The notes under the pieces are model-generated. The model made no database searches. It had not been told where the DNA came from and worked only from the letters and a program-made list of their open reading frames with translations. The translations under genes were made by a program, and so were the position numbers. From NCBI GenBank assembly GCA_965235115.1, contig OZ249437.1:14322001-14386000 (forward strand): a DNA stretch of 64,000 nucleotides. The letters are read 5' to 3'. The stretch's first letter is position 1. Each line of letters begins with the position of its first letter. Below are positions 6,001 to 60,935 of this stretch, in pieces. The stretch comes from Laetmonice hystrix (taxonomy: Eukaryota).

Positions 6001-8872
6001 ATTAATTGTGGCGCTCCCTGTCCTAGATCTTCCTAAACACTAGAAAATATTTAACATAAAAAACTGTGGGCTTAGGAATGTAGCATGCAGTCTGGTATTG
6101 TTTTCATTGCACTGCAAGGACAGATGACGTAACGGTAAGATTTGTTTTAAAAGTGTCCACCAGTGTACATACAGTTGTTTTATTTCAGTCACTTGTCAGA
6201 GGGAGCTTTGTGAGGTGTTGTCTTACGTTCTCAGTTTTTAAATGTTTTTTAAAAATCCAATTTATATAGTTTAGTAAGCAACAGAAAAGGAATGAAGTGA
6301 TTGGGAGAAATGACCAGCTTGTAAAAGTCCAGAATGAAATGGATACATGGATTTCATGTTTATAAATTTATATTTTATATACAATATGATTATGATGTTG
6401 CATCTAGACTGATCTAGATTTTTTCTTCATCATCTTTCAACTACACTTTAGCCACGTCTTCATCATAGATCTAGTAATAATATTATAATGTGCCATAAGT
6501 TTATACACCTTTTGAAGTAGATGTACATGTAGTTACATAAGTTTATACACTTTTTGAAGTAGATGTAGTTACATAAGTTTATACACCTTTTGAAATAGAT
6601 GTGGTTACATAAGTTTATACACCTTTTGAAGTAGATGTAGTTACATGACATTTTTGGGGGACTACCATAGTTTAATAAATGTGCAGTATCGACCTAGTTT
6701 TATTTTGTAACGTTGATTTTGACCTGGTTTATAATGTGTTTTTGGGTGTTGTCATAGTGTTATAATGTGATAATATGTTCAAATTCAGTGTGACATTGAA
6801 TGTTCATGTGGTGACCTAGTTTTACAAGGCGGTGTTGGGTGCCGACTTGTTGGGTTTTAGGAGCTTACGTTGGTTTTTGACATAGTGTTACCATTTGCTG
6901 TTTGGTGTGGACAAAGTGTACTGATGTGGCATTGGATGGTGACCTAGTTTTACGATGTGCCATTGGGTGTGAACAGAGTTTACTGAAGTGGCGGTGTATG
7001 TAGACCTAGTTTTACGATGTGCCATTGGTTGTGGACAGAGTTTACTGAAGTGGCGTTGTGTGTAGACCTAGTTTTACGATGTGCCATTGGGTGTGGACAG
7101 AGTTTACTGAAGTGGCATTGTGTGTAGACCTAGTTTTACGATGTGCCATTGGGTGTGGACAGAGTTTACTGAAGTGGCGGTGTATGTAGACCTAGTTTTA
7201 CGATGTGCCATTGGGTGTGAACAGAGTTTACTGAAGTGGCGGTGTATGTAGACCTAGTTTTACGATGTGCCATTGGGTGTGGACAGAGTTTACTGAAGTG
7301 GCGTTGGGTGTAGACCTAGTTTTACGATGTGCCATTGGGTGTGGACAGAGTTTACTGAAGTGGCGTTGGGTGTAGACCTAGTTTTACGATGTGCCATTGG
7401 GTGTGGACAGAGTTTACTGAAGTGGCGTTGTGTGTAGACCTAGTTTTACCATGTGCCATTGGGTGTGGACAGAGTTTACTGAAGTGGCGTTGGGTGTAGA
7501 CCTAGTTTTATGTTGTGATGTTGAATGATGACGTACTGTCCTGCTGCATGGTGTGTCTCCTGTTGCAGCCCCTGCTCGCTGCCTGTCGCTGTAACCCCAA
7601 GTCGACCCGTCGACCCATCTTCAACTGGTTCCACTGGTTCTTTGGTACCTGCGCCATGGTCCTCGCAAGTATGTGGAGTACCCTCTACCCTAACTGCGGC
7701 ACATAGATGTGTCTCATCTCGGTACAGAAGCTAGGTTTTCAGAAACACTCACAGAAATTTACAGATATTCAACTGAAGTATAGGTGATACTGGTCGCTTT
7801 GAAGTGTGTCTGATAACCTTTTACGCAATCATTGGCTACAATGATGCAATTTACAAACTATTTTGCCACCTTTTGCTGGCTTCCACCACAGAATTTAATG
7901 TTTTCACTCAAGTTCCGCTCAAGGACAGTCAAAGTCAAAATCTCACTGGCTTTCAAAGCTAACTGCAGCATTTGTCATATTTTATGGTTCTGTAAAAGTT
8001 ATAAATAAACAGTAAAATGTTAAGACTAAACTGAAGTGTTTTAGAGTAACAAGTTTGGACTATGATCTTATTGTAATAGTTCTGTGTGTGTGCTGCCATG
8101 TATCTTCATCTTGTACAGCCCCCAACATGTTCATCGGTCTGTCCCTGCCCAAGTCGCACGTTCCGTGGTGGGCTACGTGGATTCTGGTAGCTTTTATGCT
8201 CTTCCACCTCATCTGTGAACTGCTGCTGGAAATCCACGGCTGTATCAACTCACCCAAGCAGAAACGTATGTTCTCACCGATGCTAAGAGTGTCTGTTTAT
8301 ATATTATAACAAAGAAATTTAAACTGTTTTAATCATTGCAAGGTCTGTTATCATGAAACCATGAAGTATGAACTTACTGAAACCCTAGTTACCTCCTGTT
8401 GTTTACTGCAGAGCGCAGCATGGAGTATGAACTGGTGAAGAAGAACGATCCTGCGCGAGAACAAGGCTATGAGCCAGAGCCTGTGGTGAGTTTGTTATGC
8501 CTACTCATTTAATGCATAGAACTACCAAAAGTAAATCACACATTACTGCAGTAGTGAATACAATATCTTTCAGGCAGGCAAAATCTGGTCAAACGTTAGG
8601 GAATGGGTAAATTTACCAACATGTGATGGGACAAAAAGATAAACGTCCTGAAAAGGTCCGTAAGAAGGTGTGGAATATTTTATCAGGGTATTTTCAGGTT
8701 TGAGAATCGTAAGAAAGGCAGTTTCCCGTGTCCACATTCTTGGTTGGAAACTTGAGGATTCTATGGTGTCTGTTTTCAGGGGACTCGGTTCAAGACGATC
8801 ATTCTCACCATGTACGTCCTGGTGATGATCATCCTCGGACTCGTCATGGTCATCACAATCGCTGTCAGTTAG
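7..8872 (+). CDS. FRRS1: Ferric-chelate reductase 1-like protein (DOMON + cytochrome b561); 5' part lies upstream of the window
   Basis: Exons 7-216, 3148-3255, 3552-3831, 4118-4233, 4518-4604, 4858-4926, [5741-5840 or 7569-7668], 8119-8265, 8412-8485, 8780-8872. All internal junctions are GT-AG and in frame (1284 nt with one alternative exon). DOMON motif DGWVAIGFSDDKKMGDD. Four b561 heme-ligand His: KAHG, MHR, SAHP, (L/F)HW. The acceptor at position 6 is tentative. Confidence 0.93.
5741..5840 (+). CDS. FRRS1: FRRS1-like alternative exon A (PLIARYRCAPNDFFRPCFNWLHWLIGTVAFVLQ)
   Basis: ggcag| acceptor, |gtaggt donor, 100 nt, phase 0 to phase 1, paralogous to 7569-7668. Confidence 0.8.
6494..6648. 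repeat. 36-bp tandem repeat, about 4 copies (first copy 42 bp)
   Basis: Unit cataagtttatacaccttttgaagtagatgtagtta starts at 6494, 6536, 6572 and 6608. Confidence 0.9.
6941..7511. repeat. 62-bp minisatellite, 9 copies plus degenerate upstream copies
   Basis: gacctagttttacgatgtgccattgggtgtgg... recurs every 62 nt from 6941 to 7499. Degenerate gacctagtttt units occur from about 6691. Confidence 0.95.
7569..7668 (+). CDS. FRRS1: FRRS1-like alternative exon B (PLLAACRCNPKSTRRPIFNWFHWFFGTCAMVLA)
   Basis: tgttgcag| acceptor, |gtatgt donor, 100 nt, phase 0 to phase 1. Carries the RPxFNWxHW motif of this b561 family. Confidence 0.9.
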
Positions 8873-19000: not shown

Positions 19001-21704
19001 AGGTAGAACATGTTCTTCTCCTACTCTCACACAACTTATATTGGATAAACAACTTATAAAGTGTACATTCTGACCCTATATTTGACCTCGTGCCAAGATT
19101 CTGTGTCACACTAGCTGTGAGACTATAACTCTATACTTGTGTCCTGTACATGGGACCATCAGAGCGGAGTCGATTCCTCGTCTCCCACGGTCCGTCTAAC
19201 GAGCCCTATTGCCACGGCCGAGACACAGAGGGTTTCTACCTCATCCAGCAGGAGTTCACAGACAGCATGAAGAGAGACGTGACCATCGTCAACCAGCACC
19301 AAGTGAAGATGGTCACCAAGGTAAGGTCGCTTTAATGTAGGACTGGTGTCGAGTGTCTGAGGTGTCTGGGTTTGAGGATTCATAGAACAGGGATGATTCA
19401 CAGAATATATGTACGCCGTACAGTACGGGATCCCTTCTATAGGGGTTCAGTGGTGTGGGATCAAGGATCCAAATCCAGATTTTGAAAAAGGGGGTTCAAC
19501 CAAGTAAATTCTAGAAAAAGGGGTCAGTTGGCCAGTGTTCCTCGAGTCCAAATGATCACCTCATGCTACATGTAATCTCCACATCCACAGAAATTTTGGA
19601 AAGAAAATCAGATACAATATTTCAAAGCTTACCCTTTGGTAGATTTCGTAAGTCTTTCCTTAATCATAAGAGGGGAAGATATCATAGTACTCTATGATTG
19701 CAGTAAGTGTTACTCACCCCCAGGCGATGCTGCCCCCTAGTGTGGAGGAACAATATACCACATGTATTGGATTGCTGAAAGAGCCCTCTATGGTGACAAG
19801 GCTGTACTACTGCGGTGGGCTGGAACAACCAAACAACATTAGTAACATACTTCGGAATGGATTCACAGAAAATGGTCAGTTGTTGTCATCACCATCCTCA
19901 TCATCTACAAGAAGAAGATATTGAGTAGAGCCACAATAGAACATGGATATGTTATACTCTATAATTAATTATGAAACTTGTCTTCTCTTATTCTGAATCA
20001 GATAACATGTGAAAAGTAGTATTTTCATCTTACAGACTTTTCTTTTGGTGAATATGGTCGTGGATTATATTTTTCCAAGTTTCCATCGAAGGCAGCACAG
20101 TTTTCAGCAGTAAGTATTTATATAACACCAGGACCCGGTTTTTTTGTTTATTTTTCCACCGTGAGCAAGGGTGAGCTGAGCTGAGCAAGGGTGAGCATAA
20201 GCTCATTCTCACCGTTTTCTTATTTTTTTAGGTTACTTTTTTCCATGAGGCGTGCTCATGGTGAGCAAGCTCGCGGAAAAACACCACAAAAAACGAAAAC
20301 AGTGAGCAAAACGGTGAGCATGAGCTTCTGCTCACCCTTGCTCAGCTCAGGGCCCGGTTTTTTTGTTTATTTTTCCACCGTGAGCAAGGGTGAGCTGAGC
20401 TGAGCAAGGGTGAGCATAAGCTCATTCTCACCGTTTTCTTATTTTTTTAGGTTACTTTTTCCATGAGGCGTGCTCATGGTGAGCAAGCTCGCGGAAAAAC
20501 ACCACAAAAAACGAAAACAGTGAGCAAAACGGTGAGCATGAGCTTCTGCTCACCCTTGCTCAGCTCAGCTCACCCTTGCTCACGGTAGAAAAGTAAACAA
20601 AAAAACCGGGCCCAGCTCACCCTTGCTCACGGTAGAAAAGTAAACAAAAAAACCGGGCCCTGGTTTCCAGTACTACAACTTATATACACTAATTAAATAA
20701 CCTACTGGTATTGTAGAATTTAACGGTAATCAACACTGAGTTTTAGAAATGTAGACTTAATTCAAAGGTTTATCTGTACTACAAAGATACAAGCAAAATT
20801 AATTAATGTATGAACCCTTCAAGACATTTGAGTTCATTCCCTTAGTATGTCATTAGAAGATCATTTATCTAGGTTGCACTATACAGGGTGACATAAACCA
20901 TAAAAATCGCAAGCGATACCTAGCAAAGCAAATGATGGCCAAATATTAGGGGGTCCAGAGCCGTGTCCCCCCCCTCAGAATTTGCCCATGACCAGAGGTG
21001 GTTTACGTCTGCCAGCTCCATCTTAGACTGGCTGCAGCCATACCCTGTGGATAATAACTATGGTGTGGTTTTCTTACCTTAGTTTGGTAGGTTGATTGTT
21101 GCTGAGGTCGGCCTGGGTCAAACCCAAACGGTGATGAAAAAAGATCGGACCAGAAGCATGGCAGACAGCGGGAATGATTCCATCATTGTGAGTGTGTTCT
21201 CTTCTTTAAAAAAAAACTATACATGTAAGATATGATATGAGAATGGAACAATTTACCTGGTGTTGAGTTTAGACTCATATTGTAACTTTTAATCTCTCCA
21301 AAAATGCTGGTTAAAATCTATGGTGCCCTTTAGTGAAGAGTGAAAAAAATAATAAATGGTCGCCAGGCCTATATTTTTCCTCATTAGAACTGGTCATAGG
21401 TCGTATTTCAAAGAGGTTTTTTGTGCTTCTCAAATTGTCCAAATTGTTCTGCGAATTTGAAAGTCCATTTTGAGACAAATCAACATAAGAAATTCTGCAT
21501 ACAGGCTTTTAGAGATGCTGAGCTTATCGAGAGCACAGGACTGAGAGACTTAACGGCATACATACATTGTTACAGACCCCAGGCCGTCTCGTTAGCTCCG
21601 AGAAGGGTGACAGTGACAGTATGTTGTGTCAGGAGTACATCATCTTCAACGTTCACCAGGCTAAGCCTCTCTACCTCATCGAGTATGCCACTAAGTCTAC
21701 CTAG
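13075..21704 (+). CDS. GCN5-like N-acetyltransferase + coiled coil + PARP-type ADP-ribosyltransferase domain protein, 799 aa
   Basis: Exons 13075-13329, 14725-14860, 15770-16316, 16547-16711, 16985-17075, 17376-17500, 17634-17692, 17925-17994, 18265-18425, 18587-18652, 18895-19002, 19163-19320, 19724-19874, 20036-20109, 21083-21187, 21576-21704. Total 2400 nt, all phases compatible. GNAT motifs LLAVRLRFRKWGIGKYLL and HADNEAVDFFQRYGF. PARP motifs RLYYCGG...ILRNGF, YGRGLYFS, LIVAEVGLG, QEYIIFNVHQAKPLYLIEY. The exon 1 donor (gtacgt) is the least certain junction. Confidence 0.88.
15874..16230 (+). repeat. Coding 72-bp (24-aa) tandem repeat, 5 copies
   Basis: EDTSHSEPNSD(I/V)TAGEGA(H/D)SDKKG units start 72 nt apart (15874, 15946, ...) inside exon 3 of the GNAT-PARP gene. 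Confidence 0.95.
20132..20659. mobile_element. Harbinger-type MITE (about 262 bp) with a second copy of the same family nested inside at 20351-20612
   Basis: TIR g(g/a)cccggtttttt...aaaaaccgggcc. Inner copy flanked by cag/cag, outer copy by cag/ctg. The two bodies are near-identical. Confidence 0.8.
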
Positions 21705-25007: not shown

Positions 25008-25039
25008 GAATTAAGGGATCAAGTTTTTATTATACCTGG

Positions 25040-30000: not shown

Positions 30001-33000
30001 ACAAATGCGAGAGGAGGAGGAGCGAATGGCTGTTCTTATTCAGGAAGGTCATCAGGTTTATCTAGAATATGTTGAACAAGGACGTCTGGCCAAGATTGAG
30101 AAGGAGGTCAGGATACCAGCGATCAGTTACCAACCTACTCCTGGTCTTAGTCATTTCAGTTATTGAACTAACACATTTTAAGTTAAAAATCACCTTGAGT
30201 CTGAAAGCTTATTGTCAGGGTAAAAATAAAAATCTTATTTTTTATCATCCCCTGGGGCCCGTTGCATAAAAACATCCCCGCCCGCTCCGTTAAAATGTCC
30301 CGTTATAATAGCGGGGACCTTTTAGGTGCCCGTTAAAAAACAACAGTTACCGGGAACATTAGCGGGTGGGAATTTATTATGCAACGCAACGTCCCGTTAA
30401 CTGACCGTTAGCAGCGGATTTAACGGGCGGGGTTTTTTATGCAACGCACCCCTGTCTGGTTAAGCCAAGAGGCAATGCACTGGAGCATACATTTTCTATT
30501 CTTGAACTTGTATCAAAATATTTTCAACATACATGTACATCGATGGCCCAGGGAATTTGATGGTTGCATCATGCCATCTAGCATTGCTTGCCAGAATGCT
30601 AATATGTGGTCTCCTGGAATTGAAATTGGCACCTTCCAACCTGAGGCTAATTTTAGCCCCTGGGTATAAAAGAAAAGCGTTGGACCAGGGACTATTCTCC
30701 AGGAACATGGGCCACATGGGTCAAATAATAATGTGCAGTTTCTTGTGGTAAGAATTGAGTTGAAACAGGAATGGACCTAGACACTAGCTGAAAATAAAGG
30801 GGCCAGGTTTTTTTTTACTGGGAACCAGGTGCTAATAGTGTCAAGGTGCCGGGTTATTTCGATTCCTGAGTCTCTGTGACAGTGCTAGGAAAGTAGAAGG
30901 CTAAGCCTGTTACAACATGATAATTTTGAAGTTGTGATGTAAATAAGTTCCTCTGTGAGGACTTCCTCATCCCTACTAAACTATGTACAAGCATACTTGG
31001 AAATAAAACACCATTTCAATTCAAAAATTCAAATAAAAGAACATAAATGTTGGGTTTTGTAATATTTTTTTGTGATTGACAGGAGAGGCGTGGCCAGCTG
31101 GAGAAGACCAAAGAAGAAGCTGCAGCTTACCGGAGTGAACTAGAGGGTGAGATCTGACAGTCCACAATAATTTAATCGTGAATTTAAAGTTCTGTCTTAG
31201 TTTACAGTGGAACATCGATGTTGAATCAAATGTTGACTAATTCTTTATCTCATTAAACTGTATTAAACATAATGTGATCTTGCAGTTGTGAAAGAAGAAG
31301 CTGAGAAACCAGAGACAGAGGCAAAGGATCAACATAAAAAGGCCTGGGACGGTCAGTGCTGCTCTTCCTCTTCTTCCTGTTCCTTTTGTTTCTACTGCTG
31401 TGTGTGATTGTTGCACATTGTGATTGTATCTGACTATACCAGGAATAACTATGTAGTGTTTGTGCAGTTTGTGCTGCAGATATTCCTATGAAGGTATAGG
31501 TTGCATAAGAGTTGTCGTAAAATTGCAGGTCTTGAAGCTAAACATTAAAACCTTTAGAAACCTTTATTTTGGGTGAGCAACCTTTAAACCCTTTAACCCT
31601 TTCGAGATGGGCCCCTTGCAGTCGAGACGTGCACTAGTGACGACGTAACAACTGAGTGCATGTGCCATAAGGACGGGGCGTTCTGGCAGGCCACATGTGA
31701 TAATGGATTGCCTGGAATACTCCCAATCACTGTCATCTCCAGAAAAATTATCCATGTTTTAGATAAAAGTAGGGATTTGAGTCTCGAGTTGGTCTAGGTC
31801 AAACGCAGCTAGCACTCAATTGTGACGTTATATCACGGTGCTGCACTGTCGCTCTATACACAATGGGCTCTGCCGTAAGTCAAATGATACCACAAGGCAT
31901 CATCCGGCCCCCGCCTGGGAATGCCTCAGGGCATCATCTGGCCCCCGCCCGGAAATGCCTTAAAGCATCACACGTCCTTAATGGGTTAAATTGCTGTTTT
32001 AACCTTTAAACGCCTTTATTTCTCTTATGAAACCTTAAATTTTGTGATATTCTCTTTCTTCACTGTGCAATGATTTATGTGTTATACTGAAGTTTGATTG
32101 TGTCACAATGTCATTGTGCCACATTGTGTCTCCGTCTGGTTGTACTACAATTTGATTGTGGCACAATGTGATTGTGTCTCTGTCTGGTTGTACTAAAGTT
32201 TGATTGTGCCACAATGTGATTGCGTCTCCGTCTGGTTGTACTACAGTCTGATTGTGCCACAATGTGATTGTGTCTCCGTCTGGTTGTACTACAGTTTGAT
32301 TGTGCCACAATGTGATTGTGTCTCCGTCTGGTTGTACTACAGTTTGATTGTGCCACAATGTGATTGTGTCTCCGTCTGGTTGTACTACAATTTGATTGTG
32401 GCACAATGTGATTGTGTCTCTGTCTGGTTGTACTAAAGTTTGATTGTGCCACAATGTGATTGCGTCTCCGTCTGGTTGTACTACAGTCTGATTGTGCCAC
32501 AATGTGATTGTGTCTCCGTCTGGTTGTACTACAGTTTGATTGTGCCACAATGTGATTGTGTCTCCGTCTGGTTGTACTACAGTTTGATTGTGCCACAATG
32601 TGATTGTGTCTCAGTCTGGTTGTACTACAGTTTGATTGTGCCACGATGTGATTGCGTCTCCATCTGGTTGTACTAAAGTTTGATTGTGCCACAATGTGAT
32701 TGTGTCTCAGTCTGGTTGTACTTGTACGACAGTTTGATTGTGCCACAATGTGATTGCGTCTCCGTCTGGTTGTACTAAAGTTTGATTGTGCCACAATGTG
32801 ATTGTGTCTCAGTCTGGTTGTACTTGTACTACAGTTTGATTGTGTCACAATGTGATTGTGTCCCTGTCTGGATGTACTTATACTAAAGTTTGATTGTGCC
32901 ACAATGTGATTGTGTCTCAGTCTGGTTGTACTTGTACTACAGTTTGATTGTGTCACAATGTGATTGTGTCCCTGTCTGGATGTACTTATACTAAAGTTTG

Positions 33001-36000
33001 ATTGTGCCACAATGTGATTGTGTCTCAGTCTGGTTGTACTTGTACTACAGTTTGATTGTGCCACAATGTGATTGTGTCTCTGTCTGGTTGTACTACAGTT
33101 TGATTGTGCCACAATGTGATTGTGTCTCAGTCTGGTTGTACTTGTACTACAGTTTGATTGTGCCACAATGTGATTGTGTCTCCGTCTGGTTGTACTACAG
33201 TTTGATTGTGCCACAATGTGATTGTGTCCCTGTCTGGATGTACTTATACTAAAGTTTGATTGTGCCACAATGTGATTGTGTCCGCCCATGTTACAGAGGT
33301 GAAGGAGAAGCAGCAGACTGAGCGTGAAGAGAAAAGAAAGGTGGACGTGTTTATCGCCCTAGATGTGAACCAGGACGGACTGTAAGCACACTAAACTCTA
33401 GAAACCTATCATTTTCATTGTTATGTACATTCATTGACACCTTCATTTATTCAGTGGTTTTGCAATCTAAATGTTTTTGTATAGGAATGGGCAGGGGCTA
33501 AAATTCCGGAAATAGACTGTAATTGATATGAAGGCATACATTTCATTATGAGTGCAGATCTCTCATGACATGGCGTTTAAACTCTTATTGGCTGTGCTGA
33601 TTGATTTGAATGAAAATTTTTTTTAAATCTCCCAATTACATTTTCTTAGTGTAACAGTAGATGAAATGCAGCGCCATCTGGAGTTTGACATCGATTCCAA
33701 TGGTGAGGTGTCATATGAGGAGGCCAAGGTGAGAGCATTTGATCAGAAAAAGACAACATCCTAAGGATTTATTTAGTAGTTAACGATTCATCATGTTGTG
33801 TTTGTGGTAGACTTTGAAATGACTGTGCAATATATATATTTTTTTAAAATATAATTACTAAGTGACATTTCCACCGAAGCCATTTTTTTTGCTCAGGCAG
33901 ACGACAGTTCATGTAAAATGTGAACTTTATTGAATGAATTTTATAAGTTGAAGAATTTTTTGTTTAACAGGAATATTTGGAAGATAATGACCAGATGGAC
34001 ATGTCGTTATTTGCTGAGAAAGTTTGGCCTAACATCAAGGAGATTTATCGTGATGAAACAACTATCACTGAGCCAGAAAAGACCGAGGAAGATTCAACTG
34101 TAAGTACTTGTGTTCTTGAAGCATCCCTAGACAACGTTTTTAGTTATAATAATCAATCTATTCTAGCTCCAATTAAGTTCCCTAATTAGTGTCAGTTGGT
34201 TGGTCAGTATCTGTTGGTTTGAACACATAAATGTAAGACAGATTTTGTTTCTGAGATGCACTCGTTGAGTTCCGCCCCAGCAAGTTGGCCGTTGATTGCA
34301 ATGATCTTCAGTACTGTTTAAGGTGTTAGTTTGATTTTTATATTACCTGTTAACCTTTGTTTTAAACCTTCCAAATTCCACTGACTCTGAGACCTTTCAG
34401 GTGTTTTAGAGCTAAATAGGAACTATACCCTCGTCCAGCATAGAATTACTCCAGGTTTCTGTTGATAAGATTTATTCTGCGCTCTTACGAGCATTGATCA
34501 CTCCCCGGCAAGGCAGGTCGGTTCCTGTTTTGTTGTCTTTGTGATTGATGATTGTCGCCATGGTAACAGGATCCCACAGAGGAGCCTCCTGAGCTTCCTG
34601 AGCTACATGAAGGAGCTGACGAAGAGGATGATCGTGCTGAGGAGGAGGAGGACGAGGATGAGGGAGAGGTGGGCTGCATGATCTTACACTGTCCAATCAG
34701 CTGTGCCGTGAAACTGTCCAGTCTGCTCATATCTCACGTGGCACTGTCCTGTCAGCTCCAAGTTGACACTGCTGCACAATGTTTAATAATTTACAGGGGC
34801 TTGTTTTTTAATATCTTCAGTAAGACATGACATAAGTCTGGTTTCCTCTTTTTAAGTGACCCCTTCCCATAGTACTTAAAGGGACGATGAATAGATCGGC
34901 CAAAATGTGAGCTTGTGTTGTACTTGGGGATTGGTACATATTGCAGGGTGTTAGAACAATCTCAGATTCCAAGAAAACTGGGAAAAGGGGTTAGCAGATG
35001 CTAAATGCATATAGCCAGGATTGGTAAAATGTAAATAAGCTTATTGCCATATTTTAAAAAAGAACTCGTCTGTAAAATACCAATGGAAACCAAAAAATGA
35101 GGACATGTAAATAATAATGGATCAAGGGGAATTCTTTGCCTCATCGAGACAAGGAAACACTGCGTACCATCAGAAGGGCGAGAATTTTTGTCATTTTGAG
35201 ATAAACAAAAGAAAATGACTCCATCTTTAACCACTTGCCGGCGGGATTAATGTTTAATTATCTGACCCCCTGGTTGGGTTAATTCTGTTAATTACATGTA
35301 TTTTAATGCAAATTTTTGCGTATATATACGTCATCCGTTAGAATGGAAGGTTCTATGCATGCGTATATACACGTCATCCGCCGGGAAGTGGTTAAAAAGA
35401 TGACATTGATGAAGTGGGTGTGATGTCCATTAACAGGAGGAGGAGATAGAGGAGGCCGGGGAGGGTAATTCTCACCGGTCCTCTCGCCGCGCTAATGGAG
35501 ACATGGAGGACAGTGACAGTTCCTTACATATGGTACTCGAGTTTACATCTCACACCCTGCTTCTGGTTATGTGTGCCTCAGTTTTAATGCATGCTTTGGG
35601 TGTGGCATGTAATGGGCATGGCATTATGGGGATGGGCTATGCAATGGGCATGGTGTGCAGGGGGCATGTTATTCAAGGGGCGTGGCATGCAATGGGCGTG
35701 GCATGTAGGGGGCGTGGCATGCAATGGGCGTGGCATGTAGGGGGCATGGCATGCAGGGGGCGTGGCGTGCAGGGATGTTCTGTGCTGTTTGAGTGGGTAT
35801 CCAGGGTGTTCATAAGAAAAAGAAAAAGACCCTGAGTATAATGTTCATTGGGGCCTACATGTCGTCATACTGTGGTTATTTGTGTTGTGTTCAGGGATGA
35901 AAGTTTTCAGGAAATTTCCTGAAATCAGGAAATTTGAAAAAATCCCCCCCCCCCACAAGAAATAACACCCAAAAAAGGAAATAGGCCTAGATCTAGAATA

Positions 36001-39000
36001 TAGGCAAAAGAGGTAGGCCTAAGCCAAGGCTAAGTATTACCCTGGACTGTGTGGTGGGCAATTTTATTTGTTAATATCAAATGAAACAATATCCCCTTCC
36101 AGGACGTTTTTTAACACCATGCAGCTCAATATATCTCTACCTGCCAAAGTTCGTTTATAGATGGGGATATTAGAGTGTCTCAAACCCGTCCAGTGTCACG
36201 GGTGCCGCCGTGCATAGGCCGGTCTGCCGGGGGTGCTGGTGACAGTGGTGTACCGCCCACGGTCCCTGTAGCTGTGGTCACATCGCTCACATAGACCGGC
36301 CCGCGTGGGCTGACTTCTACCGGCACGCGGTGGCGTCTGTCCCGTCTGGCAGGCACGGCCCCGTGTCGCTGTGGTGAGAGCGACTCACCTCAGGTAATGA
36401 CTTCAGGCAAAACTGATGGTCAGGCAGCTGCGAAGCCCGTTGATTCAGGCTTGCCATTATGCCATATCCATGCACAAGTTTTGCCTGAGCGCCCACTTAG
36501 TGATAGCAACGAGACTATAGACAGACCGGTCTGTCTAGTCCCGGTGATAGTGATTAGGCTGACGAACTACGCACCATCACAATGTCACTCCTCACAGGAA
36601 ACTGGGTCAATTTAGTTCTATGAATCTGCCTAGTATATATGTCAGTAAGTTCTCATAATGTTTTCTTGCATATAAATTTGAGGATAATGGCATTACGTAA
36701 GTGGTTTTCACTGAAGTTTTGGGGTTTTCAGGACTTTTCATTACATTTGTCGATCAGTGCAGGTGTCCTGATAAGACCGGAAGTGACAATATTCATTCAC
36801 AACAACATGAGTGGCACATGGACACACGGGCTGAACCACTCGACTCAGCGACTGTGTTGCTTGGCTGAGAGCCGCTGAGGGTCGTGACTGCTGAGGGTCA
36901 AGACTGATGGACAGCCTGTGTGGTCAGTCTAACACATGGAAGCTGTTTGACAACGTAATCGGGTGCATTTTGGACGCTAAAAGCCGACTGGATTCCAATG
37001 TTGGAGAGAGACGGCAGAGCCAGGCAGAGGTTGACACTGAGTCTGACAGGCAAGCAACAGCCTTGGACAGGGGCATGGACTGATGAGTGATGGAGTCTAT
37101 CCAGCAAATTTGCAGGGGTGGGGGGTTGGGGGTGGGTGGGGGGTGGGGGGGTGGGTGGCGACTAAATACTGAGGGCTAGGCCCTATAATATATAATAGCT
37201 AGGAGGCCTTATCGGATCATGATTGTCTGCTGTTCCTAGCCTGACTTTTTTTAAGGGGGGGGGGGGGGTAAGCCTTGGATGTGCGCATGAACAAATATTA
37301 ATTATGGACATTGGCCCCCGCCGCTCCCCCCCCCCCCCCCCCCCCCCGGGTCAGGATTTCAGGAAATTTTACAGCTGGCCACTTTCATCCCTGTGTGTTA
37401 CCGTGGCTTGTATCCAAACAGCATGTGATCGCATTGCTAAATCCCTTGTTGGCATGCTAGCATAGATGTCGTGAATGATTGGAAGATTTGATTCAGAAAG
37501 ATAATATCAGTCTGCTGGCGTTCACGTTAACACAATTTTCCTGCGTATTTACGCATAATATGGAAAGGGGACGCAAAATTCAAATGTATTTTGCGCCAGT
37601 TGTAGATGGTACTGGGGTCCCAGGGGTCCATGGGACCCTAATTTCAAAATTGCTGATGCAAACACTGGTCTGCTTTATCTGAAACCATAAAATAAAGGAA
37701 CTAAAGTAACATGATGCTGACATTGATACATGTAGCAGCTGGTTGGGAAATTAGGGCAGTAAATGATTATGTCAGTAAAGAGAAAAAAGAGAAGAAAGGG
37801 CCACGTGAGGGCTTACATTACCCCCCCATGTCTCCACCAAATCACCCCAGTAACGGTTAAGGACCCATTTTTTAAGGCTTTGTCTCCAGAGCCTTGGCTG
37901 ACGTATGGAACCAGTAACTGCATGTAACCGATTGAAGGATAAGCCTGGTATAGTCGTTTTATTACCAGTGACTGTACCCTAAACTAATGTTTGGTATAGT
38001 CGTTTTATTACCAGTGACTGTACGGTGTACCCTAAACTGATGTTTGGTATAGTCGTTTTATTACCAGTGACTGTACCCTAAACTGATGTTTGGTATAGTC
38101 GTTTTATTACCAGTGACTGTACCCTAAACTGATGTTTGGTATAGTCGTTTTATTACCAGTGACTGTACCCTAAACTGATGTTTGGTATAGTCGTTTTATT
38201 ACCAGTGACTGTACCCTAAACGGATGTTTGGTATAGTCGTTTTATTACCAGTGACTGTACCCTAAACGGATGTTTGGTATAGTCGTTTTATTACCAGTGA
38301 CTGTACCCTAAACTGATGTTTGGTATAGTCGTTTTATTACCAGTGACTGTACCCTAAACTGATGTTTGGTATAGTCGTTTTATTACCAGTGACTGTACCC
38401 TAAACTAATGTTTGGTATAGCCGTTTTATTACCAGTGAATGTACCCTAAACTGATGTTTGGTATAGTCGTTTTATTACCAGTGAATGTACCCTAAACTGA
38501 TGTTTGGTATAGTCGTTTTATTACCAGTGACTGTACCCTAAACTGATGTTTGGTATAGTCGTTTTATTACCAGTGACTGTACCCTAAACTAATGTTTGGT
38601 ATACATGTAGTCGTTTTATTACCAGTGACTGTACCCTAAACTAATGTTTGGTATAGTCGTTTTATTACCAGTGACTGTACCCTAAACTAATGTTTGGTAT
38701 ACATGTAGTCGTTTTATTACCAGTGACTGTACCCTAAACTAATGTTTGGTATACATGTAGTCGTTTTATTACCAGTGACTGTACCCTAAACTAATGTTTG
38801 GTATAGTCGTTTTATTACCAGTGACTGTACCCTAAACTGATGTTTGGTATAGTCGTTTTATTACCAGTGACTGTACCCTAAACTGATGTTTGGTATACAT
38901 GTAGTCGTTTTATTACCAGTGACTGTACCCTAAACTGATGTTAGATTGCAGACTTCCACAGGCCTGTATGAACTGAATGTGGTAGTAAGGAGCTGCCGTA

Positions 39001-42000: not shown

Positions 42001-44231
42001 GCATGGCCCCCTGTTCAGACACCTCTCTGTATGGGTAACTTCTTGTATAAGTTGTAATGAAATGCAGATTGCAGTCCGCCATTTGGTGAAAGTTATACTA
42101 ATTTATGTTTCACGAGCGAGTATCCTAGTTCTGTTTGACATTGATGAAGTGTGTCATGCTTTTGGAGAGCAATGAAAACGGAATCATATCTTGACTTCAC
42201 TCTGTATCAGAAAAGAATAATTCTGTTCCACCTGTTTCTAGCCAAGAACGTATCCTATCCTAGTTTAATTTGAGGGGTGGGGGTGCAGCAGAGGTGTAGG
42301 CAGAACTAAGCTAAGGGGGGGGGGGGGGGAGGGTTCCAACCACAATTTTAGTCAGACTCCATTTATTTAGCTATTTCATTATCTATTAATTGGGGGAGGG
42401 GCAGGCTGGGAGGGGGGGCAATTTTTTACTTTTGCCCCGGGTGCCAGGAACCCTCGCTACGGCTACGCCACTGCCCTGGGAGTGGGAGATAGATCTAGTG
42501 TCAACGAAAAGTCCAGGTAAGTATGAACAAATAACATGGTTACTGGAAATTCCATTGACTATGGGGGGGTAGTTTTGATGACAACGAACGGCGTTGCCGT
42601 TGGTTGCAGGCCCGTACCCAGGGGGGTTCCGGACCCCCCCCCCCCCCCCGGGAGGGAGAGGCCTCGCACCTGAGGGTACCCAGGCCCCACGAACTGAATA
42701 CAAAAGATGGAACCCCCCCCCCCCCCAAGGGCTAAGGAAAGGAGTATCTACGGGCCTGTGTTGGGAAATACCACCCCAAAATCCCCAAGGCGGCCGTACG
42801 TCAGTCTACAAACGCGAACAGTATCACAGGCCACGGCCACTCTAGACGAGTCGTGGTTGTGTAGGCTTCACCGTCTTGACCTTCAAGCTAGGTGCCCAAA
42901 GTGTTTTTTAATAAGAATATCTATGGGCCCTAATAGGCCTAGTCTATTCTGGTTTCATAACTACAGTCACGTAGGGCGGCCGCCTAAATAAAATAGGTAT
43001 AGCCTAACTATAACTTGTTATGGCTGCTGCACGCCGGGTTGTCGTGTCGGAACTCCCACTGCCCTAGGCTAGGGCGGCCTACACTACAGTTGTCTACAGC
43101 CTCGCAAAAAGAATGCGTAGATCTAACGTTATACTAGCCTAGATAGGCTACGGTCTTTCTGTGTTTCTCAAAATGTTTCTCAAACACCAAAAACACTTAT
43201 TACATGAGAGTACACACCCTGAGAAGGAGTTAGATAGTCATCTGTTTTAAAATGGTCGTAGCAGACATCACTTGGCTGAGGCCGCCAAGGCCCAAGCCAA
43301 GGTCTGGTCGGTTTACTACTAATACTAGGCTACTGCCTCTTCTCACAGTCACAGCGACGCTCATTGGGGAATTTATGTCCACCAATTTTGTTAGAACAAC
43401 CAGGTACCCAACAATATCCCGGCATTTTTCTTTGGGTGATGACTGATCGCGTTTTTTCGACAGTGACACACTGACAGATCTTTGTTTACACTAGACCCTA
43501 GATCTTCTTGCCTATATACGGCCTTGCGCACAGTGACCGTCACAATGCCTACGCTAGACTTTTCGCACTTGCGCGCCACCTACCGTTTCAAATTCTGTCT
43601 TCCCCTATTAAAAATAACATGTATTAGGAGAGAAATGAAAATATTGTTATGTTTTGTCCGTGTGTTATAAAACAGGACCCAGTATATTCATTCATTCATT
43701 CATTCATTCATTCATTCATTCATTCATTCAGTCATTCAGTCATTCAGTCATTCATTCATTCATTGTCTGAACATGTTCAGTAGTTATTTTGTAAGAGTCT
43801 GACATACGTGATGTGTTGTTCTCTGCAGACAATGGGGAAGCTGGGACGGGCCAGATAATAATCTTTACTCAGTGATGAAGTTTGACCGGGGCCAGAATTG
43901 TTGGAATGGACCAGACCGTTCTGTTAGGGTGAGTTCCATGCCACAACTCAGTTTAATTATAAACATGCAAATTCTTCTCGACTAAAGTAATTGTACATGT
44001 AATATTAACTATATCAGTTGTAAGAAGTAATATATTACTGCTTTGGGAATATTGTTGGACATTTTAAAAAAATTTGGTTCCTTTTTGCAGGTTTTGATAT
44101 CGTGTGGGAAAACGAACGAGGTTTTTGCAGCGTCTGAGCCGAACCGGTGTGAATACGAGTTTAAGTTCTCATCACCAGCTGCATGTTCAAAACCACCTAA
44201 GAAATCAGACGATAGCCATGATGAACTTTGA
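27099..44231 (+). CDS. PRKCSH: Glucosidase II subunit beta, 551 aa
   Basis: Exons 27099-27195, 28944-29066, 29233-29328, 29644-29698, 29989-30106, 31083-31146, 31286-31351, 33297-33381, 33650-33728, 33971-34099, 34570-34668, 35437-35532, 39056-39128, 39531-39600, 39923-40087, 43829-43928, 44091-44231 (1656 nt, in frame). Signal peptide, RPRG, FTCLDG...[19 protein letters not shown]-hand-like LDVNQDG and FDIDSNGE, acidic tract, MRH domain (CWNGPDRS...EPNRCEY), C-terminal HDEL. Confidence 0.96.
30255..30451. mobile_element. Harbinger-type MITE, 197 bp
   Basis: TIR gggcccgttgcataaaa / ttttatgcaacgcaccc; 3-bp TSD ctg/ctg. Confidence 0.75.
31597..31985 (-). mobile_element. Internally deleted piggyBac-like element
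   Basis: TTAA at 31593-31596 and 31986-31989, CCC...GGG termini, imperfect TIRs. Minus-strand ORF from 31755 begins [14 protein letters not shown], resembling the acidic N-terminus of piggyBac transposases. Confidence 0.55.
32091..33282. repeat. 48/54-bp minisatellite, about 24 copies, in PRKCSH intron 7
   Basis: Unit agtttgattgtgccacaatgtgattgtgtctccgtctggttgtactac. The array ends about 14 nt before the exon 8 acceptor. Confidence 0.97.
35231..35391. mobile_element. piggyBac-type MITE, 161 bp
   Basis: TTAA TSD on both sides; TIR ccacttgccggcgg / ccgccgggaagtgg. Confidence 0.8.
37947..38940. repeat. 46/52-bp minisatellite, about 21 copies, in PRKCSH intron 12
   Basis: Unit tttggtatagtcgttttattaccagtgactgtaccctaaactgatg. 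Four units carry a 6-bp ACATGT insertion. Confidence 0.97.
40204..41418 (+). pseudogene. SAP-domain N-terminus of a probable SWIM/YqaJ-type transposon ORF, frameshifted and truncated
   Basis: Exon 40204-40313 reads [37 protein letters not shown] (SAP). Exon 41087-41418 reads ...YDAHDNF...[10 protein letters not shown], with a 1-nt excess just after the acceptor. No downstream exons found. Confidence 0.65.
42607..42758. mobile_element. MITE with CAG...CTG termini and poly-C tracts
   Basis: TIR caggcccgta / tacgggcctg; flanks ggttg / tgttg (5 bp, one mismatch). Confidence 0.7.
43235..43372 (-). pseudogene. Degenerate THAP domain of the transposase ORF
   Basis: Minus strand, across a stop and frameshifts: FPNE...KRQ*...VNRPD...[18 protein letters not shown]. 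Matches the THAP pattern P...W...R...W.P....C..HF. Confidence 0.55.
43686..43764. repeat. (ATTC)n microsatellite with AGTC interruptions
   Basis: Directly visible. Confidence 0.97.
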
Positions 44232-52315: not shown

Positions 52316-53917
52316 ATGATGCTGCTAGGACGTAGTCTATGGTTCCTGGGTGTGCTCACTCTGGGGGTGTCCGCCGAGAAATGTCCGATATCGGCTCCAC
52401 CCGGATTCACGGAGGCAACGCTCATGCCTGACAGGGCGTACTTGTTCTATAAACGGGAAGGGGACACGATCAACATGATCCCGTGCTGTAAGACGACCGG
52501 TTGGTGTGGCATCGGCGTCTCTCCCGTCACCCATGACATGCGCAACTCGGACGGAGCAATAGCATGGCAGATTGGCGAGCGAGGCGAGGCCAAGGTATGG
52601 AGGCTACACCTGTCCGAGCAAACCTTTTCCCTCATGAGCAAACCTGGATCCGCCCCTGAAAGGCTCCAAGCTCCAAAGCTTTAGCCCACTTTCGGCAAAT
52701 GTAACTAAAAGGGCTGATAGGCCTGCGTGGGCCCAAATTCATAAAAGCTTGCCAAACATATAGTTTGTTGGTAAACACGCTTCCGAGTCCAGTTGATTGT
52801 TTGATGGTATTCGCGAAATAACTGTGGCAAGGTTCTAAGTCGCTTATTAAATTTAGAGTGGATCAGGGGTATCTCTAAGATACTGATTCTTAGATCTTTT
52901 AAGAACCGTTAAATTGACGGAAATGAGAATGCCATCACACAGCGCGTGACGAGGCTAGTGACCAGCATGAGGTGGTGCCAGGCTGTTGTGGCTGTTTATG
53001 GTTCCTCCACCCGGTATACTGAAGCTCCAGGCTGTTGCTTTTTTTCAGTGAATCAAGTGTTCAATTAAAAAAGCAGGAAATTGAGATCGAGACCGTTTCT
53101 TTTCCCCCTTTTCAGAGTGTGTACGTAGAAGATACCCGTGTGAAGCCCCAGTTATCATCGGACACTGTATGGAATCTTCACCAGTTTGACGCCAAGGACG
53201 GCTGGGTCCGACCCTGGTATAAAAGACCCATGGAAGCACCGGCTTCAGTCTCCACTGCCAAGTCTTTCAAGGTGCGTAACATTGTCATTTAATTACTTAT
53301 CACGAGGGTCACAATGTGAGATTAATTAGCTAATATTCTTAAACAGAGTGAATGATACAAGTAGAAGTCTATAGTGGCGGCACCAGGATTTCCAAACTGG
53401 GGGCAAATATGGAGGGCGAACAAACGGGGCAGAAACATTTTGCAAGTGCACAAAAGCGTTTTTTTACTGAAGCCGACCGAGGGAGACGTGGAGCAAGCGT
53501 AATGACTAGGGGAGGGGGTATGCCCCCATGCATGCCACCCCCGTGGTGCAGCCACTTTTAGGCATAGGCCTAATCAAAATACATGTATATCGTAGCCTAT
53601 CTCCCGCAAGTCAGTACATGGCGCCCTTGCCACTTCACCAAGAGACTACAGTGGCCCCCCTCATAAGCGACCACCCCTGCTGCAGAGAGAAAGTGGTCGC
53701 TAGTGGCGGGTGGTCGCCTAAACGAGGGGTCGTTAAGTACACATGGTTACCACCAGGTGGCTACATGTCAGATAACTACACACAGTTAACACTAGGTGGC
53801 GACTTCCCAGTTAGAGGGAGGGGACAAAGAGGGAGGCACGTGTGGAGTTATTCTTGCCAAATAACCCCAGATGACAAAATGACACAGTTTCAGTTCAGAG
53901 AGACAAAAAATATTTAA
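52316..53917 (+). CDS. Small secreted stand-alone DOMON-domain protein (exons 1-2 solid, exon 3 tentative)
   Basis: Exon 52316-52594: signal peptide MMLLGRSLWFLGVLTLGVSA, TGWCGIGVSP..HDMRNSDGAIAW, aag|gtatgg. Exon 53116-53271: VYVEDT...DTVWNLHQFDAKDGWVRPWYKRPM, aag|gtgcgt. Possible last exon 53786-53917 in phase 0 with a weak acceptor. Confidence 0.7.
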
Positions 53918-54556
53918 TTTTATTTAAGGAAAGACTCTAGTCTTGTCTGTTTCATTTCATTTACGGCTTTTCTAGACTCTTTTTTTAGCAAGTCTTGCAG
54001 TTTGTAAACGCAGTCCAGCATCTGTGTAGGTCTGCTGTTTCAGAGCAAAGTCTACAATTTGCACTGCATTCTGCCACGCTTTTTTAGGGGTTTCAATAGG
54101 CATGGTAGTAGGAGGGGGGCAAAACTGTTAGCTTAATGTGTGATGGAAGCCTGGCGGGGAAGGTGAGAGACTGGGCCTAGCAGCCGTGGTGGGGCCGGGC
54201 AGGCAAGGTGGTCGGGCCGGGCAGGCAATGTGAGACACGTGGCCATTGTGGGATGGAAGTGGCTGGGTGGGTGGGGGTTTGGGGTGTTGGTGTTGGGTCG
54301 GCAGGATGCCAGGCAGGCCGGCATGGGGAGACAACAGTGTTATGACTAGCCACGGCTGGCTGATTCTCAAAGGCTGGTCGCTGATAAGGGGTGACCAGTG
54401 GAGTTGGTGCAGGGATATGCCGGTCGCTGGTCGTTAGTGCCGGGTGGTCGCTTATAAGGGTGGAATTATAGTGTGAAGTGGTTAATGCAATGAAAATGCG
54501 GTCGCTAGAGGCGGGTGGTCGCTTATAAGGGGTGGTCTTTAACAGGGGGACCACTG
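53649..54556. mobile_element. TA-flanked cagtgg(c/t)cccc termini (Tc1/mariner-type MITE ends); one element or two fragments
   Basis: ta|cagtggcccccc...aagcgaccaccc at 53649 and its inverse ggtggtcgctt...ggggaccactg|ta ending at 54556. Confidence 0.55.
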
Positions 54557-54904
54557 TATATGGCTCTATAGGTTTCATGACAAGCGAAGGTATAGCATAT
54601 ATTCTGTCTGACAGGTCGGATCCAACACGATAATCTGGTCTTTTAAAAATGGGCCTCTCATGACGTACGCCAACGTCATAATGCACGACGTTCAGGGTAT
54701 AACAAGCATACGGATACACACAGACACGGGCAGTGTAAGTTACATCTCTTGTCGTTTTCGCAAAGGAATTCCATAGTCTAATCCAGGCGCGGGTGCAGCA
54801 TTTCTTCGCGGGGGGTGGGGGTGGGGGTGGGGGTGGGGGGGGGGGGGTCAACGGTCTACGGGAACGCGCCAATATCAACCTATAAAAAATTGGGGGATCT
54901 TGAG

Positions 54905-56430: not shown

Positions 56431-56865
56431 CTCCACTCATCTATGGGTTCAGGAAGTAGCTGCTGACATCTGACGGTCAACTACAGGTGGCGCTGCGATC
56501 GGGAGTGGAACTCCCATTGAATTGTAAAAAGATCGTCTTGCCACCGGGTTGTGTTTGTTTTTTTCATTAACCACAGGAGAACAATGGCCTTTGACCTAAT
56601 TTAGGTTTCTAAGAAGAATATACACCAAACGACCATAGGAGGTAGAAGTATTTTCCATTAGGCCTACTTTCTGCAGATTATCGTGTTTAACCATCCCTTG
56701 AACAACAGCGTTACTAAACTGGGGGTCCGTAGATAGAAACTGCTAGCATGCAATCGGTATAACTAGTTTTGGCATAAGCGTCTCGGAATCTATGCATGAC
56801 ACCTTGTTCAAAGTGTTGTCTCGCTGCGCATAGTTTGGAGTTGTACGCTTCTATCATTGGTGACC

Positions 56866-60066: not shown

Positions 60067-60935
60067 ACATTCCTTCTCCACATTCCTTCGGATACGTCTA
60101 CTACGTAGTTTCTATTAATCATACGCAGTTATTATATTTGAATGCTTACTCATCATGCTGATTCATCATGTGGTACAGTTATGCTACCACGCAGTTAGAT
60201 AACATATTTGATAATATATGACATAGTTACTGTATGGGTAATGTATTATATGACCATAATCACGGTACATAAAGAATATATAGACTAAACATAATATAGA
60301 ATTTCATGCACATTATACTCAGATCCTAACAAAAGGTACAATGCGGTGCATCAAACAGGAGTCAAATTGGACACCTGGCAGCTGCATGATATTTGACCTA
60401 ATTCCGGCATTGCGCTTTTAGACAATGATTTTTCTTTTTAGAGCCACGGGAATAATATCAAAGCTATTGAGCTGAAACTTTAACATACAAGGGATAATAC
60501 CATGAAGTTATAATAAGAGAAATTTTATTGAATTATAAAGCATAGTTCTTGAAATATTAAAATTTGAAGTTCGGGGCGTTTTTTTTATCCAACAATGTTG
60601 TTCTTGAAGCACATAATTGTTGGCGTTTGCTAAAAAATCATCTCTATATTTAATTACACCCACCAACTGGCTAGTGCCCCAAGCCTGGTACTACATTCCT
60701 TCTGTCACGTCCACTACGTAGTTTCTATTAATCGTTCTTGCTCATCAGTGTCAACCCAATACGCAGTTATTATACATGTATTTCAATGCTTACTCATCAT
60801 GCTGATTCATCATGTGGTACAGTTATACAACCATGCAGTTAGATAATATATTTGATAATATATGACATAGTCACTGTATGGGTAATGTATTATATGGCCA
60901 AAATCACGGTATATAGACTAAACATTATGCACATT
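60067..60935. repeat. Diverged direct duplication (about 60067-60310 and 60695-60935; also about 59479-59520 and 60592-60634)
   Basis: Shared blocks ctacgtagtttctattaatc, tgcttactcatcatgctgattcatcatgtggtacagttat, atatttgataatatatgacatag. Confidence 0.85.

What the first reader, a model, noticed from the sequence alone, without database searches (positions are those of the whole stretch)
6524..60780. Recurrent TA to TACATGTA 6-bp gain in three unrelated repeat alignments
Seen: (a) 36-bp array, gatgTAgtt in other copies but gatgTACATGTAgtt at 6524-6531. (b) 46-bp array, ggtaTAgtc in most units but ggtaTACATGTAgtc at 38602, 38700, 38752 and 38896 (probably one event, later amplified). (c) 60-kb duplication, ttaTAtttg at about 60135 but ttaTACATGTAtttc at 60773-60780. 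Cases b and c are not copies of adjacent sequence, so simple slippage does not explain them; case a could be slippage with one mismatch. Isolated TACATGTA also recurs in introns (for example near 21220, 30530, 35293, 37727, 43996). Inference: a sequence-specific mutational process adds CATG plus a second TA at TA sites. This resembles the excision footprint of a TA-targeting transposon with CA...TG ends, or an unknown micro-insertion mechanism.
Basis: partly seen in the sequence, partly recalled or inferred. Interest (0 to 1): 0.8.

Follow-up and report, generated by a model that had tools for sequence, protein, structure and literature searches.

The report
Transposon excision scars TACATGTA at TA sites
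The repeated change of TA into TACATGTA is real and is best explained as the scar left when TA-inserting "cut-and-paste" transposons with CA...TG ends jump out; the mechanism is textbook, but here the scars are so common that they rank among the most frequent 8-letter words of this 627-Mb animal genome.

Summary
TACATGTA occurs 13 times in the window against 1.35 expected. All three repeat alignments show TA against TACATGTA, and the longer form is the derived one in every case I could polarise: 1 of 4 units, 4 of 21 units, 1 of 5 genomic paralogues, and a new case in 1 of 4 copies of a young Tc1-like element.

Genome-wide there are 79,253 copies. Composition-matched palindromes have 9,000-29,000. 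In an independent 150-kb sample the count is 12 against a mean of 2.3.

The inserted CA+TG equals the first and last two bases of resident TA-flanked elements:
- an intact Sleeping-Beauty-like Tc1 element;
- a second DDE_3 element;
- two non-autonomous families, one with a copy in the window at 53647-54558.

The same geometry holds for TAGGCCTA (168,757 copies). It also arises as TA to TAGGCCTA and matches a TA|GGCC...GGCC|TA family. An earlier first-reader note of this scan (s1-306583, other DNA of this genome) had flagged TAGGCCT(A).

Verdict: these are canonical excision footprints with two bases kept from each end. The mechanism is known. The two-sided +6 form and its abundance are the unusual parts.

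Caveats:
- No locus showed empty, filled and scar states together.
- The 2-nt cut is inferred.
- One window site (35293) is inherited inside a MITE family.

The parts
6524..6531 (.). TACATGTA scar in unit 1 of the 36-bp array (6494-6646); the other three units have a single TA or TG here
38602..38903 (.). Four scar-bearing units (38602-38609, 38700-38707, 38752-38759, 38896-38903) of the 46-bp array 37946-38942; 17 other units read GGTATAGTC. Probably one event spread by unequal exchange
60773..60780 (.). TACATGTA scar in one paralogue; derived, since 4 of 5 genomic paralogues have plain TA
60135..60136 (.). Unscarred TA of the neighbouring paralogue (GCAGTTATTA-TA-TTTG)
19567..19574 (.). Isolated TACATGTA, unique context, polarity unknown
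21220..21227 (.). Isolated TACATGTA, unique context, polarity unknown
30530..30537 (.). Isolated TACATGTA, unique context, polarity unknown
37727..37734 (.). Isolated TACATGTA at single-copy depth; also present in the sequenced sample S2, so not private to the reference
43994..44001 (.). Isolated TACATGTA, unique context, polarity unknown
53580..53587 (.). Isolated TACATGTA, single copy in the genome, 59 bp upstream of a resident TA|CAGTGG element and 7 bp downstream of a TAGGCCTA
35293..35300 (.). TACATGTA inherited inside a 165-bp TTAA-flanked MITE (35227-35391); part of the family consensus, not a local event
53647..54558 (.). Resident donor-type element: 912 bp, TA on both sides, ends CAGTGG[C/T]CCCCCT...; the family has at least 152 matching ends genome-wide

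Best explanation
TACATGTA sites are excision footprints of cut-and-paste DNA transposons that insert at TA and have 5'-CA...TG-3' ends (the Tc1/mariner kind). Insertion duplicates the TA. On excision the transposase cuts the 5' strand two bases inside each end, so each flank keeps TA plus a 2-base 3' overhang (CA on the left; CA on the bottom strand on the right, which reads TG on top). The two overhangs cannot pair. End joining fills in and ligates them without trimming, giving TA-CA-TG-TA, a net gain of 6 bp. Scars drift to fixation like any neutral mutation and are also copied when they lie in tandem arrays or in other mobile elements. Shown here: TA specificity, polarity (gain), the genome-wide excess, and the match between scar bases and the ends of resident elements. 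Inferred: the 2-base stagger, the fill-in joining, and which families made which scar.
For: 1) Excess. 13 in the window against 1.35 expected. 79,253 genome-wide. Controls: TAGTACTA 8,978, TACTAGTA 10,313, ATCATGAT 18,997, ATGTACAT 28,579. After collapsing tandem copies it is the 12th commonest of about 31,500 octamers in 214 kb and the first of the 61 composition-matched palindromes seen there (22 against a median of about 3). In the independent sample the count is 12 against a mean of 2.26.
2) TA on both sides is specific. For the cores CATG, GGCC and GATC the flank pair TA..TA is first or second; for TGCA, GTAC, CTAG and AGCT it is rare.
3) Polarity. 1 of 4 units, 4 of 21 units, 1 of 5 genomic paralogues, and copy L018 of a 98.4%-identical Tc1-like family reads GATAATA[CATGTA]ATTAT where L016, L017 and L019 read GATAATAATTAT.
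4) Indel spectrum. Among 6-bp gaps in all self-alignments of 250 kb, the ones that are not tandem duplications are mainly CATGTA at TA (three loci) and GGCCTA at TA.
5) Donors. An intact 340-aa HTH_SB + HTH_Tnp_Tc3_2 + DDE_3 transposase sits in a 1.68-kb element bounded TA|CAGTTGTGCCC...|TA. There is also a second DDE_3 element (CAGTCTG...), a MITE with at least 77 ends, and the window's own element family with at least 152 ends.
6) Parallel case. TAGGCCTA (168,757 copies against 13,415 for ATGGCCAT) also arises as TA to TAGGCCTA. It matches a TA|GGCCCATTCG... family in which 54 of 60 exact ends are preceded by TA.
7) Only the 2+2 form is enriched. The 3+3 palindrome TACAGCTGTA occurs 0 times, and TACAGTA/TACTGTA show only a mild excess.
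8) The general mechanism is established: overhang-derived footprints for Sleeping Beauty (PMC7827188) and Tc1 scars TATGTA/TACATA at TA in C. elegans (PMC12632400).
Against: No locus was found with empty, transposon-filled and scarred states together (the single read-laying run showed no polymorphism at the covered sites). The best-characterised resident element is Sleeping-Beauty-like, and that family is known to cut 3 bases in and leave TAC(A/T)GTA, not TACATGTA. The one autonomous family checked has only about 7 copies, and only 57 DDE_3 matches were listed (a lower bound), so tens of thousands of scars need long or intense past activity. Part of the total rides in tandem arrays and in at least one MITE family. 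C. elegans Tc1 mostly leaves +4, not +6. No paper in the searched library gives TACATGTA as a footprint.
Confidence: 0.8

Rival explanations
1. The scars come from TA-inserting elements whose ends are the palindromes CATG, GGCC and GATC, cut four bases in (as reported for Minos). The two 4-base overhangs would then be self-complementary and re-ligate directly to TA-CATG-TA. This is a variant of the footprint reading with different cut geometry and different donors.
For: All enriched cores are 4-base palindromes. The GGCC donor family does begin GGCC. Direct ligation of compatible ends would explain why a single scar form dominates.
Against: Every CA-type TA-flanked element found begins CAGT, not CATG. 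No TA|CATG...CATG|TA element was seen in 250 kb. Any inverted-repeat element gives a palindromic 2+2 scar, so palindromy does not discriminate.
Confidence: 0.08
2. TACATGTA is common for reasons unrelated to transposon excision, such as amplification inside repeats, a protein-binding motif or compositional bias. The few TA/TACATGTA differences would then be slippage or coincidence.
For: About 70 of the first 100 genomic hits lie in regularly spaced arrays. The 35293 site is carried by a MITE consensus in at least 50 copies. Case (a) could be slippage with one mismatch. TACATGTA is a known promoter motif in oomycetes.
Against: The excess survives tandem collapsing and holds in an independent sample of unique contexts. 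Flank-swapped and core-swapped controls are 3-9 times rarer. Four polarised gains share one exact 6-bp sequence at a TA. A binding motif would not explain the parallel TA to TAGGCCTA gains.
Confidence: 0.07
3. An unknown sequence-specific micro-insertion process acts at TA sites without any transposon. For example, a nuclease makes a staggered break and a fixed filler is added.
For: No filled allele was seen at any scar. No donor with GA...TC ends was found for the third enriched word, TAGATCTA.
Against: The inserted bases equal the ends of resident TA-flanked elements for the two strongest classes. No known repair process adds a constant tetranucleotide. Hairpin-derived additions would copy the flank, not CATG (inference from the established chemistry).
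Confidence: 0.04

Closest known systems
Tc1 (and Tc3) excision footprints in Caenorhabditis elegans
   Same: TA target, CA...TG element ends, and a scar made of TA plus terminal transposon bases plus TA. A 2-base staggered cut is known for Tc1/Tc3 (my recollection of van Luenen 1994 and Vos 1996; not read here).
   Different: In C. elegans about 78% of somatic scars are +4 (TATGTA or TACATA, one overhang kept; PMC12632400). Here the recurrent fixed scar is +6 with both overhangs kept. No +4 case appeared among 61 four-base gaps, and TACATA/TATGTA show only a weak excess.
Sleeping Beauty canonical footprint TAC(A/T)GTA
   Same: Same superfamily and same logic: 3' overhangs from the transposon ends are kept by end joining (PMC7827188). 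The intact resident transposase carries the HTH_SB domain.
   Different: Sleeping Beauty cuts 3 bases in and gives a +5 scar. In this genome TACAGTA/TACTGTA show only a mild excess (32 against about 18 for comparable words), and the 3+3 word is absent.
Minos 6-bp footprint in Drosophila (my recollection of Arca et al. 1997; not read here)
   Same: A net +6 scar at a TA left by a Tc1-family element.
   Different: The Minos scar holds four bases of one end, resolved from a heteroduplex of 4-base overhangs. Here the scar holds two bases of each end.
Mariner/Stowaway and Harbinger excision sites in rice (PMC4423477)
   Same: A genome-scale reading of fixed excision sites as a mutational force.
   Different: In rice only 8 of 94 excisions were clean, and most carried deletions or filler. 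Here one exact scar dominates strongly enough to distort octamer frequencies.

Membership tests
Tc1/mariner-type excision footprint | The scar sits at a TA and is bounded by TA on both sides (the duplicated target) | tested here: met
   All polarised cases are TA to TA-CATG-TA. TA..TA is the first or second flank pair of CATG, and rare for the control cores.
Tc1/mariner-type excision footprint | The internal bases equal the terminal bases of resident TA-inserting elements | tested here: met
   Four families are bounded TA|CAGT...ACTG|TA.
Tc1/mariner-type excision footprint | A Tc1-type DDE transposase is present and potentially active | tested here: met
   57 DDE_3 matches, several with open frames. 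A 340-aa ORF has HTH_SB, HTH_Tnp_Tc3_2 and DDE_3. The copies are 98.4% alike.
Tc1/mariner-type excision footprint | The scar is the derived state | tested here: met
   1 of 4 units, 4 of 21 units, 1 of 5 paralogues and 1 of 4 transposon copies.
Tc1/mariner-type excision footprint | The same locus is seen empty, transposon-filled and scarred | tested here: inconclusive
   No filled unit of array (b) exists in the genome. No polymorphism was seen at the covered sites in one other sample. Too few loci could be examined.
Tc1/mariner-type excision footprint | The 5' strand is cut 2 bases inside the element | not testable with these tools
   Inferred only, from the exclusive enrichment of 2+2 words.
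Sleeping Beauty-type canonical footprint (3-base overhang) | The scar reads TACAGTA or TACTGTA | tested here: not met
   Only a mild excess. None of the observed gains has this form.
C. elegans Tc1 +4 footprint | The scar reads TACATA or TATGTA | tested here: inconclusive
   176 observed against 140 expected on both strands (z 3.1). No such event among the 4-bp gaps. The hexamer background is too high to decide.
Replication slippage / tandem duplication | The inserted bases copy the adjacent sequence | tested here: not met
   CATG is absent from the flanks in (b), (c) and L018. Case (a) would need a G to C mismatch.

The most novel reading that the evidence does not exclude
This genome carries roughly 250,000-300,000 uniform 'two bases from each end' scars from at least three TA-targeting transposon classes: GG..CC about 169,000, CA..TG about 79,000, GA..TC about 38,000, and perhaps CC..GG. 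That is about one per 2-3 kb, far more than the surviving donor copies. If so, three things would follow. Germline end joining here keeps both non-complementary 2-base overhangs with unusual fidelity. DDE_Tnp_4 (PIF/Harbinger-ISL2EU-like) elements with a TA target excise with Tc1-like geometry. Excision scars are a leading source of 6-bp gains and of new TA targets.
Probability: 0.45. Interest if true: 0.6.

Novelty: new member of a known kind. Interest (0 to 1): 0.45.

Why it matters
The mechanism itself is textbook, so the window finding needs no new biology. What matters is scale and uniformity. If these words are scars, they form a countable fossil record of past excisions. From it one could estimate historical excision rates per family, see how the germline repairs non-complementary 3' overhangs, and measure how much cut-and-paste elements contribute to small indels even when few copies survive. 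Annotation and motif-discovery pipelines should also expect TA-flanked palindromes such as TACATGTA and TAGGCCTA to appear as false 'regulatory motifs' in such genomes.

Tried and rejected
Later searches could not return loci, so paralogue states had to be read from pattern matches only.
- A first anchor pattern for the MITE at 35293 matched only the window copy, because the anchors were not conserved. A mismatch-tolerant pattern then showed that the octamer is in the family consensus.
The shortened, unbiased '+6' probe of one 9-bp interval of the high-copy hAT-like family gave only 3 hits: one TA to TAGGCCTA and two triplet slippage. This is too few for a spectrum.
- A search for a transposon-filled unit of array (b) found nothing.
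- Paralogue probes for two isolated sites (window 53580 and L004:6994) showed both to be single copy, so they are uninformative.
- Read laying (one call allowed) used contigs of a single other sample. It showed no 6-bp polymorphism at the covered scars, and the array was poorly covered.
- No TA-flanked element with GA...TC ends was found in the held sequence, so TAGATCTA has no identified donor.
- Searches for inverted repeats around the DDE_Tnp_4 hit in L009 did not delimit an element.
- Literature searches found no paper that gives TACATGTA or TAGGCCTA as a footprint.
- The organism's name is coded. Only 'marine animal, nearest GT92 clusters chordate' could be inferred.
Full report
**The observation**

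TACATGTA occurs 13 times in the 64-kb window, against 1.35 expected from dinucleotide-preserving shuffles (maximum 4).
- In the 36-bp array at 6494-6646, one of four units has GATGTA[CATGTA]GTT.
- In the 46-bp array at 37946-38942, four of 21 units have GGTATA[CATGTA]GTC.
- Near 60 kb, two diverged copies about 640 bp apart read TTATTATATTTG and TTATTATACATGTATTTC.

Small corrections: (c) is not a 60-kb duplication; the site given as 43996 is at 43994; two more isolated sites lie at 19567 and 53580.

**Is it more than chance, and is it more than this window?**

The window is C2:14322001-14386000 of a 627-Mb assembly in 35 contigs. Genome-wide counts, with the TA-flanked word against the same core with AT flanks, are:

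| Core | TA-flanked | AT-flanked |
|---|---|---|
| CATG | 79,253 | 18,997 |
| GGCC | 168,757 | 13,415 |
| GATC | 37,955 | 14,261 |
| CCGG | 16,600 | 3,469 |
| GTAC | 8,978 | 28,579 |
| CTAG | 10,313 | 9,864 |

. So there is no general liking for TA flanks; particular cores are favoured.

In that independent sample TACATGTA occurs 12 times, all in unique contexts. The mean for 54 composition-matched non-CpG palindromes is 2.26 (Poisson 5e-6). In the 214 kb of sample plus window, after collapsing tandem copies, TACATGTA is the 12th commonest of all octamers. The three leading TA-xy-y'x'-TA palindromes are TAGGCCTA (58), TACATGTA (22) and TAGATCTA (17), against a median of about 3. For these cores TA..TA is the first or second commonest flank pair; for the control cores it is rare.

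**Polarity**

The longer form is the minority in both arrays. For (c), a gapped pattern found five paralogues in the genome. Four read GCAGTTATTATATTTGAATGCTTAC, and only the window copy at 60763-60793 carries TACATGTA.

A fourth, new case came from a young Tc1-like family whose copies are 98.4% alike. Copy L018 reads GATAATA[CATGTA]ATTAT, where L016, L017 and L019 read GATAATAATTAT. All four cases are gains at a TA.

In an all-against-all self-alignment of the held sequence, most 6-bp gaps are plain tandem duplications. The ones that are not are mainly CATGTA at TA (three loci) and GGCCTA at TA.

One window site is not independent. 35293 lies in a 165-bp TTAA-flanked MITE that is absent from some contigs of another sample. 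The family consensus holds TACATGTA in at least 50 copies. Many of the first genomic hits also lie in arrays, so part of the total is amplification.

**Donors**

A DDE_3 search found 57 matches. Five loci hold a 1.68-kb element bounded TA|CAGTTGTGCCCAAAAG...|TA. It has a 340-aa ORF with HTH_SB, HTH_Tnp_Tc3_2 and DDE_3 domains. The genome has only about seven copies.

Other TA-flanked CAGT-ended elements are:
- a second DDE_3 element (L023);
- a 187-bp MITE family with at least 77 ends;
- a 912-bp element in the window itself at 53647-54558, whose family has at least 152 ends. It lies 59 bp from the TACATGTA at 53580.

So the bases added to TA (CA and TG) are the first two and last two bases of resident TA-inserting elements.

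**The parallel case**

TAGGCCTA is even more enriched: 26 sites in unique contexts in the window. It arises the same way.
- In a 32-bp minisatellite in L005, CCATTATGTATGG becomes CCATTA[GGCCTA]TGTATGG.
- One copy of a hAT-like family reads TAG-TA[GGCCTA]TATA.

A matching family exists. A 734-bp element is bounded TA|GGCCCATTCGACTGGCC...|TA. It has about 100 ends genome-wide, most with identical repeats, and 54 of 60 exact ends are preceded by TA. That proportion does not fit a 3-bp TWA duplication. A DDE_Tnp_4 hit lies inside one 7.4-kb copy bounded by these repeats, and DDE_Tnp_4 genes are very abundant (720 candidates). An earlier first-reader note of this scan (s1-306583, another piece of this genome) had flagged TAGGCCT(A) as footprint-like.

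**Geometry**

Only the 'two plus two' form is enriched. The 3+3 word TACAGCTGTA is absent, and no 10-base TA-flanked palindrome stands out. The Sleeping-Beauty-type words TACAGTA/TACTGTA show only a mild excess, part of which is element ends. No +4 Tc1-type event appeared among the 4-bp gaps, though TACATA/TATGTA show a weak excess.

Fill-in and ligation of the two non-pairing overhangs would follow. This step is inferred.

**Comparison with what is known**
- Sleeping Beauty leaves scars identical to its 3-base overhangs (PMC7827188).
- C. elegans Tc1 leaves TATGTA or TACATA in about 78% of somatic excisions (PMC12632400).
- In rice, clean excision sites are rare (8 of 94; PMC4423477).

No paper in the searched library gives TACATGTA or TAGGCCTA as a footprint. 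The mechanism is therefore known. The two-sided +6 scar as the dominant fixed form, and its sheer number, are the unusual parts.

**Weak points**
- I found no locus with empty, filled and scarred states together.
- The best-characterised donor is Sleeping-Beauty-like, which would be expected to cut at +3.
- Known donors are few compared with tens of thousands of scars, so long past activity must be assumed.
- TAGATCTA has no identified donor.
- Sampling outside the window was limited to 150 kb.

**Verdict**

The kind of thing is known. Interest is moderate because of the abundance, the uniformity and the multi-family pattern.

Noticed in passing
window: 26 sites, e.g. 13345, 22548, 23263-26406 (11 sites in 3.1 kb), 35982, 36014, 53565, 63260-63354; genome-wide: TAGGCCTA is the commonest palindromic octamer: 168,757 copies against 13,415 for ATGGCCAT and 3,469 for ATCCGGAT, almost all in unique contexts. 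It arises as TA to TAGGCCTA (L005:2145-2460; G000:C1:40207444). It matches a TA|GGCCCATTCGACTGGCC family with about 100 ends, one long copy of which holds a DDE_Tnp_4 gene.
   Followed up: partly
window 6466, 35988, 42490, 43118, 46765; 10892, 22069, 26212, 27672; genome-wide: TAGATCTA (37,955 against 14,261 for ATGATCAT) and TACCGGTA (16,600 against 3,469 for ATCCGGAT) are also enriched TA-flanked palindromes. No donor element with GA..TC ends was found. Composite strings such as TAGGCCTAGATCTA (35982-35995) look like adjoining scars that share a TA.
   Followed up: partly
window 35886-37393: A 1.5-kb non-autonomous element with Ac-like ends (CAGGGATGAAA...) is absent from some contigs of another sample, so the insertion is polymorphic. 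Its read depth is thousands of times the single-copy level. A 95% copy lies in L003:1382-2704. Its parts also occur in a 2016 marine metagenome run.
   Followed up: partly
window 35227-35391: A 165-bp MITE flanked by TTAA with ends CCACTTGCCGGCGGG... is a polymorphic insertion. At least 40 copies at 86-98% identity exist genome-wide.
   Followed up: partly
window 47249-50471 (ORF 48250-49212, minus strand): A long inverted repeat starting GGCTCTGGTTGGTCCC encloses a 320-aa ORF with a Myb/SANT-like DNA-binding domain (PF13873, E 8e-21). This looks like the accessory gene of a Harbinger-type transposon. The true ends lie further out than the TA I first took as the boundary.
   Followed up: no
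G000:C12:27558645-27930799 and G000:C1:26032355-26081760: DDE_Tnp_4 genes with open frames of 363-399 aa recur at about 13-kb spacing (at least 25 copies on C12). On C1, frames of 154-365 aa recur at about 7-kb spacing (8 copies). These are tandem arrays of transposase-bearing units rather than dispersed insertions.
   Followed up: no
L009:8378-8393; G000:C1:109046-109059: Double scars TACATGTATACATGTA and TACATGTACATGTA occur. This is what repeated insertion and excision at adjacent TAs, or at the TA created by a first scar, would give. Slippage is not excluded.
   Followed up: no
window 56857-58149 (+): An uninterrupted 430-aa ORF has a glycosyltransferase family 92 domain (E 2e-45). The nearest protein clusters are galt-1-like and mostly chordate.
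   Followed up: no
window, e.g. 37116-37158, 37300-37345, 55530-55545: Long G or C runs are very frequent. GGGGGGGG and CCCCCCCC are the commonest octamers (96 and 82 overlapping hits), often inside or at the edges of repeats.
   Followed up: no
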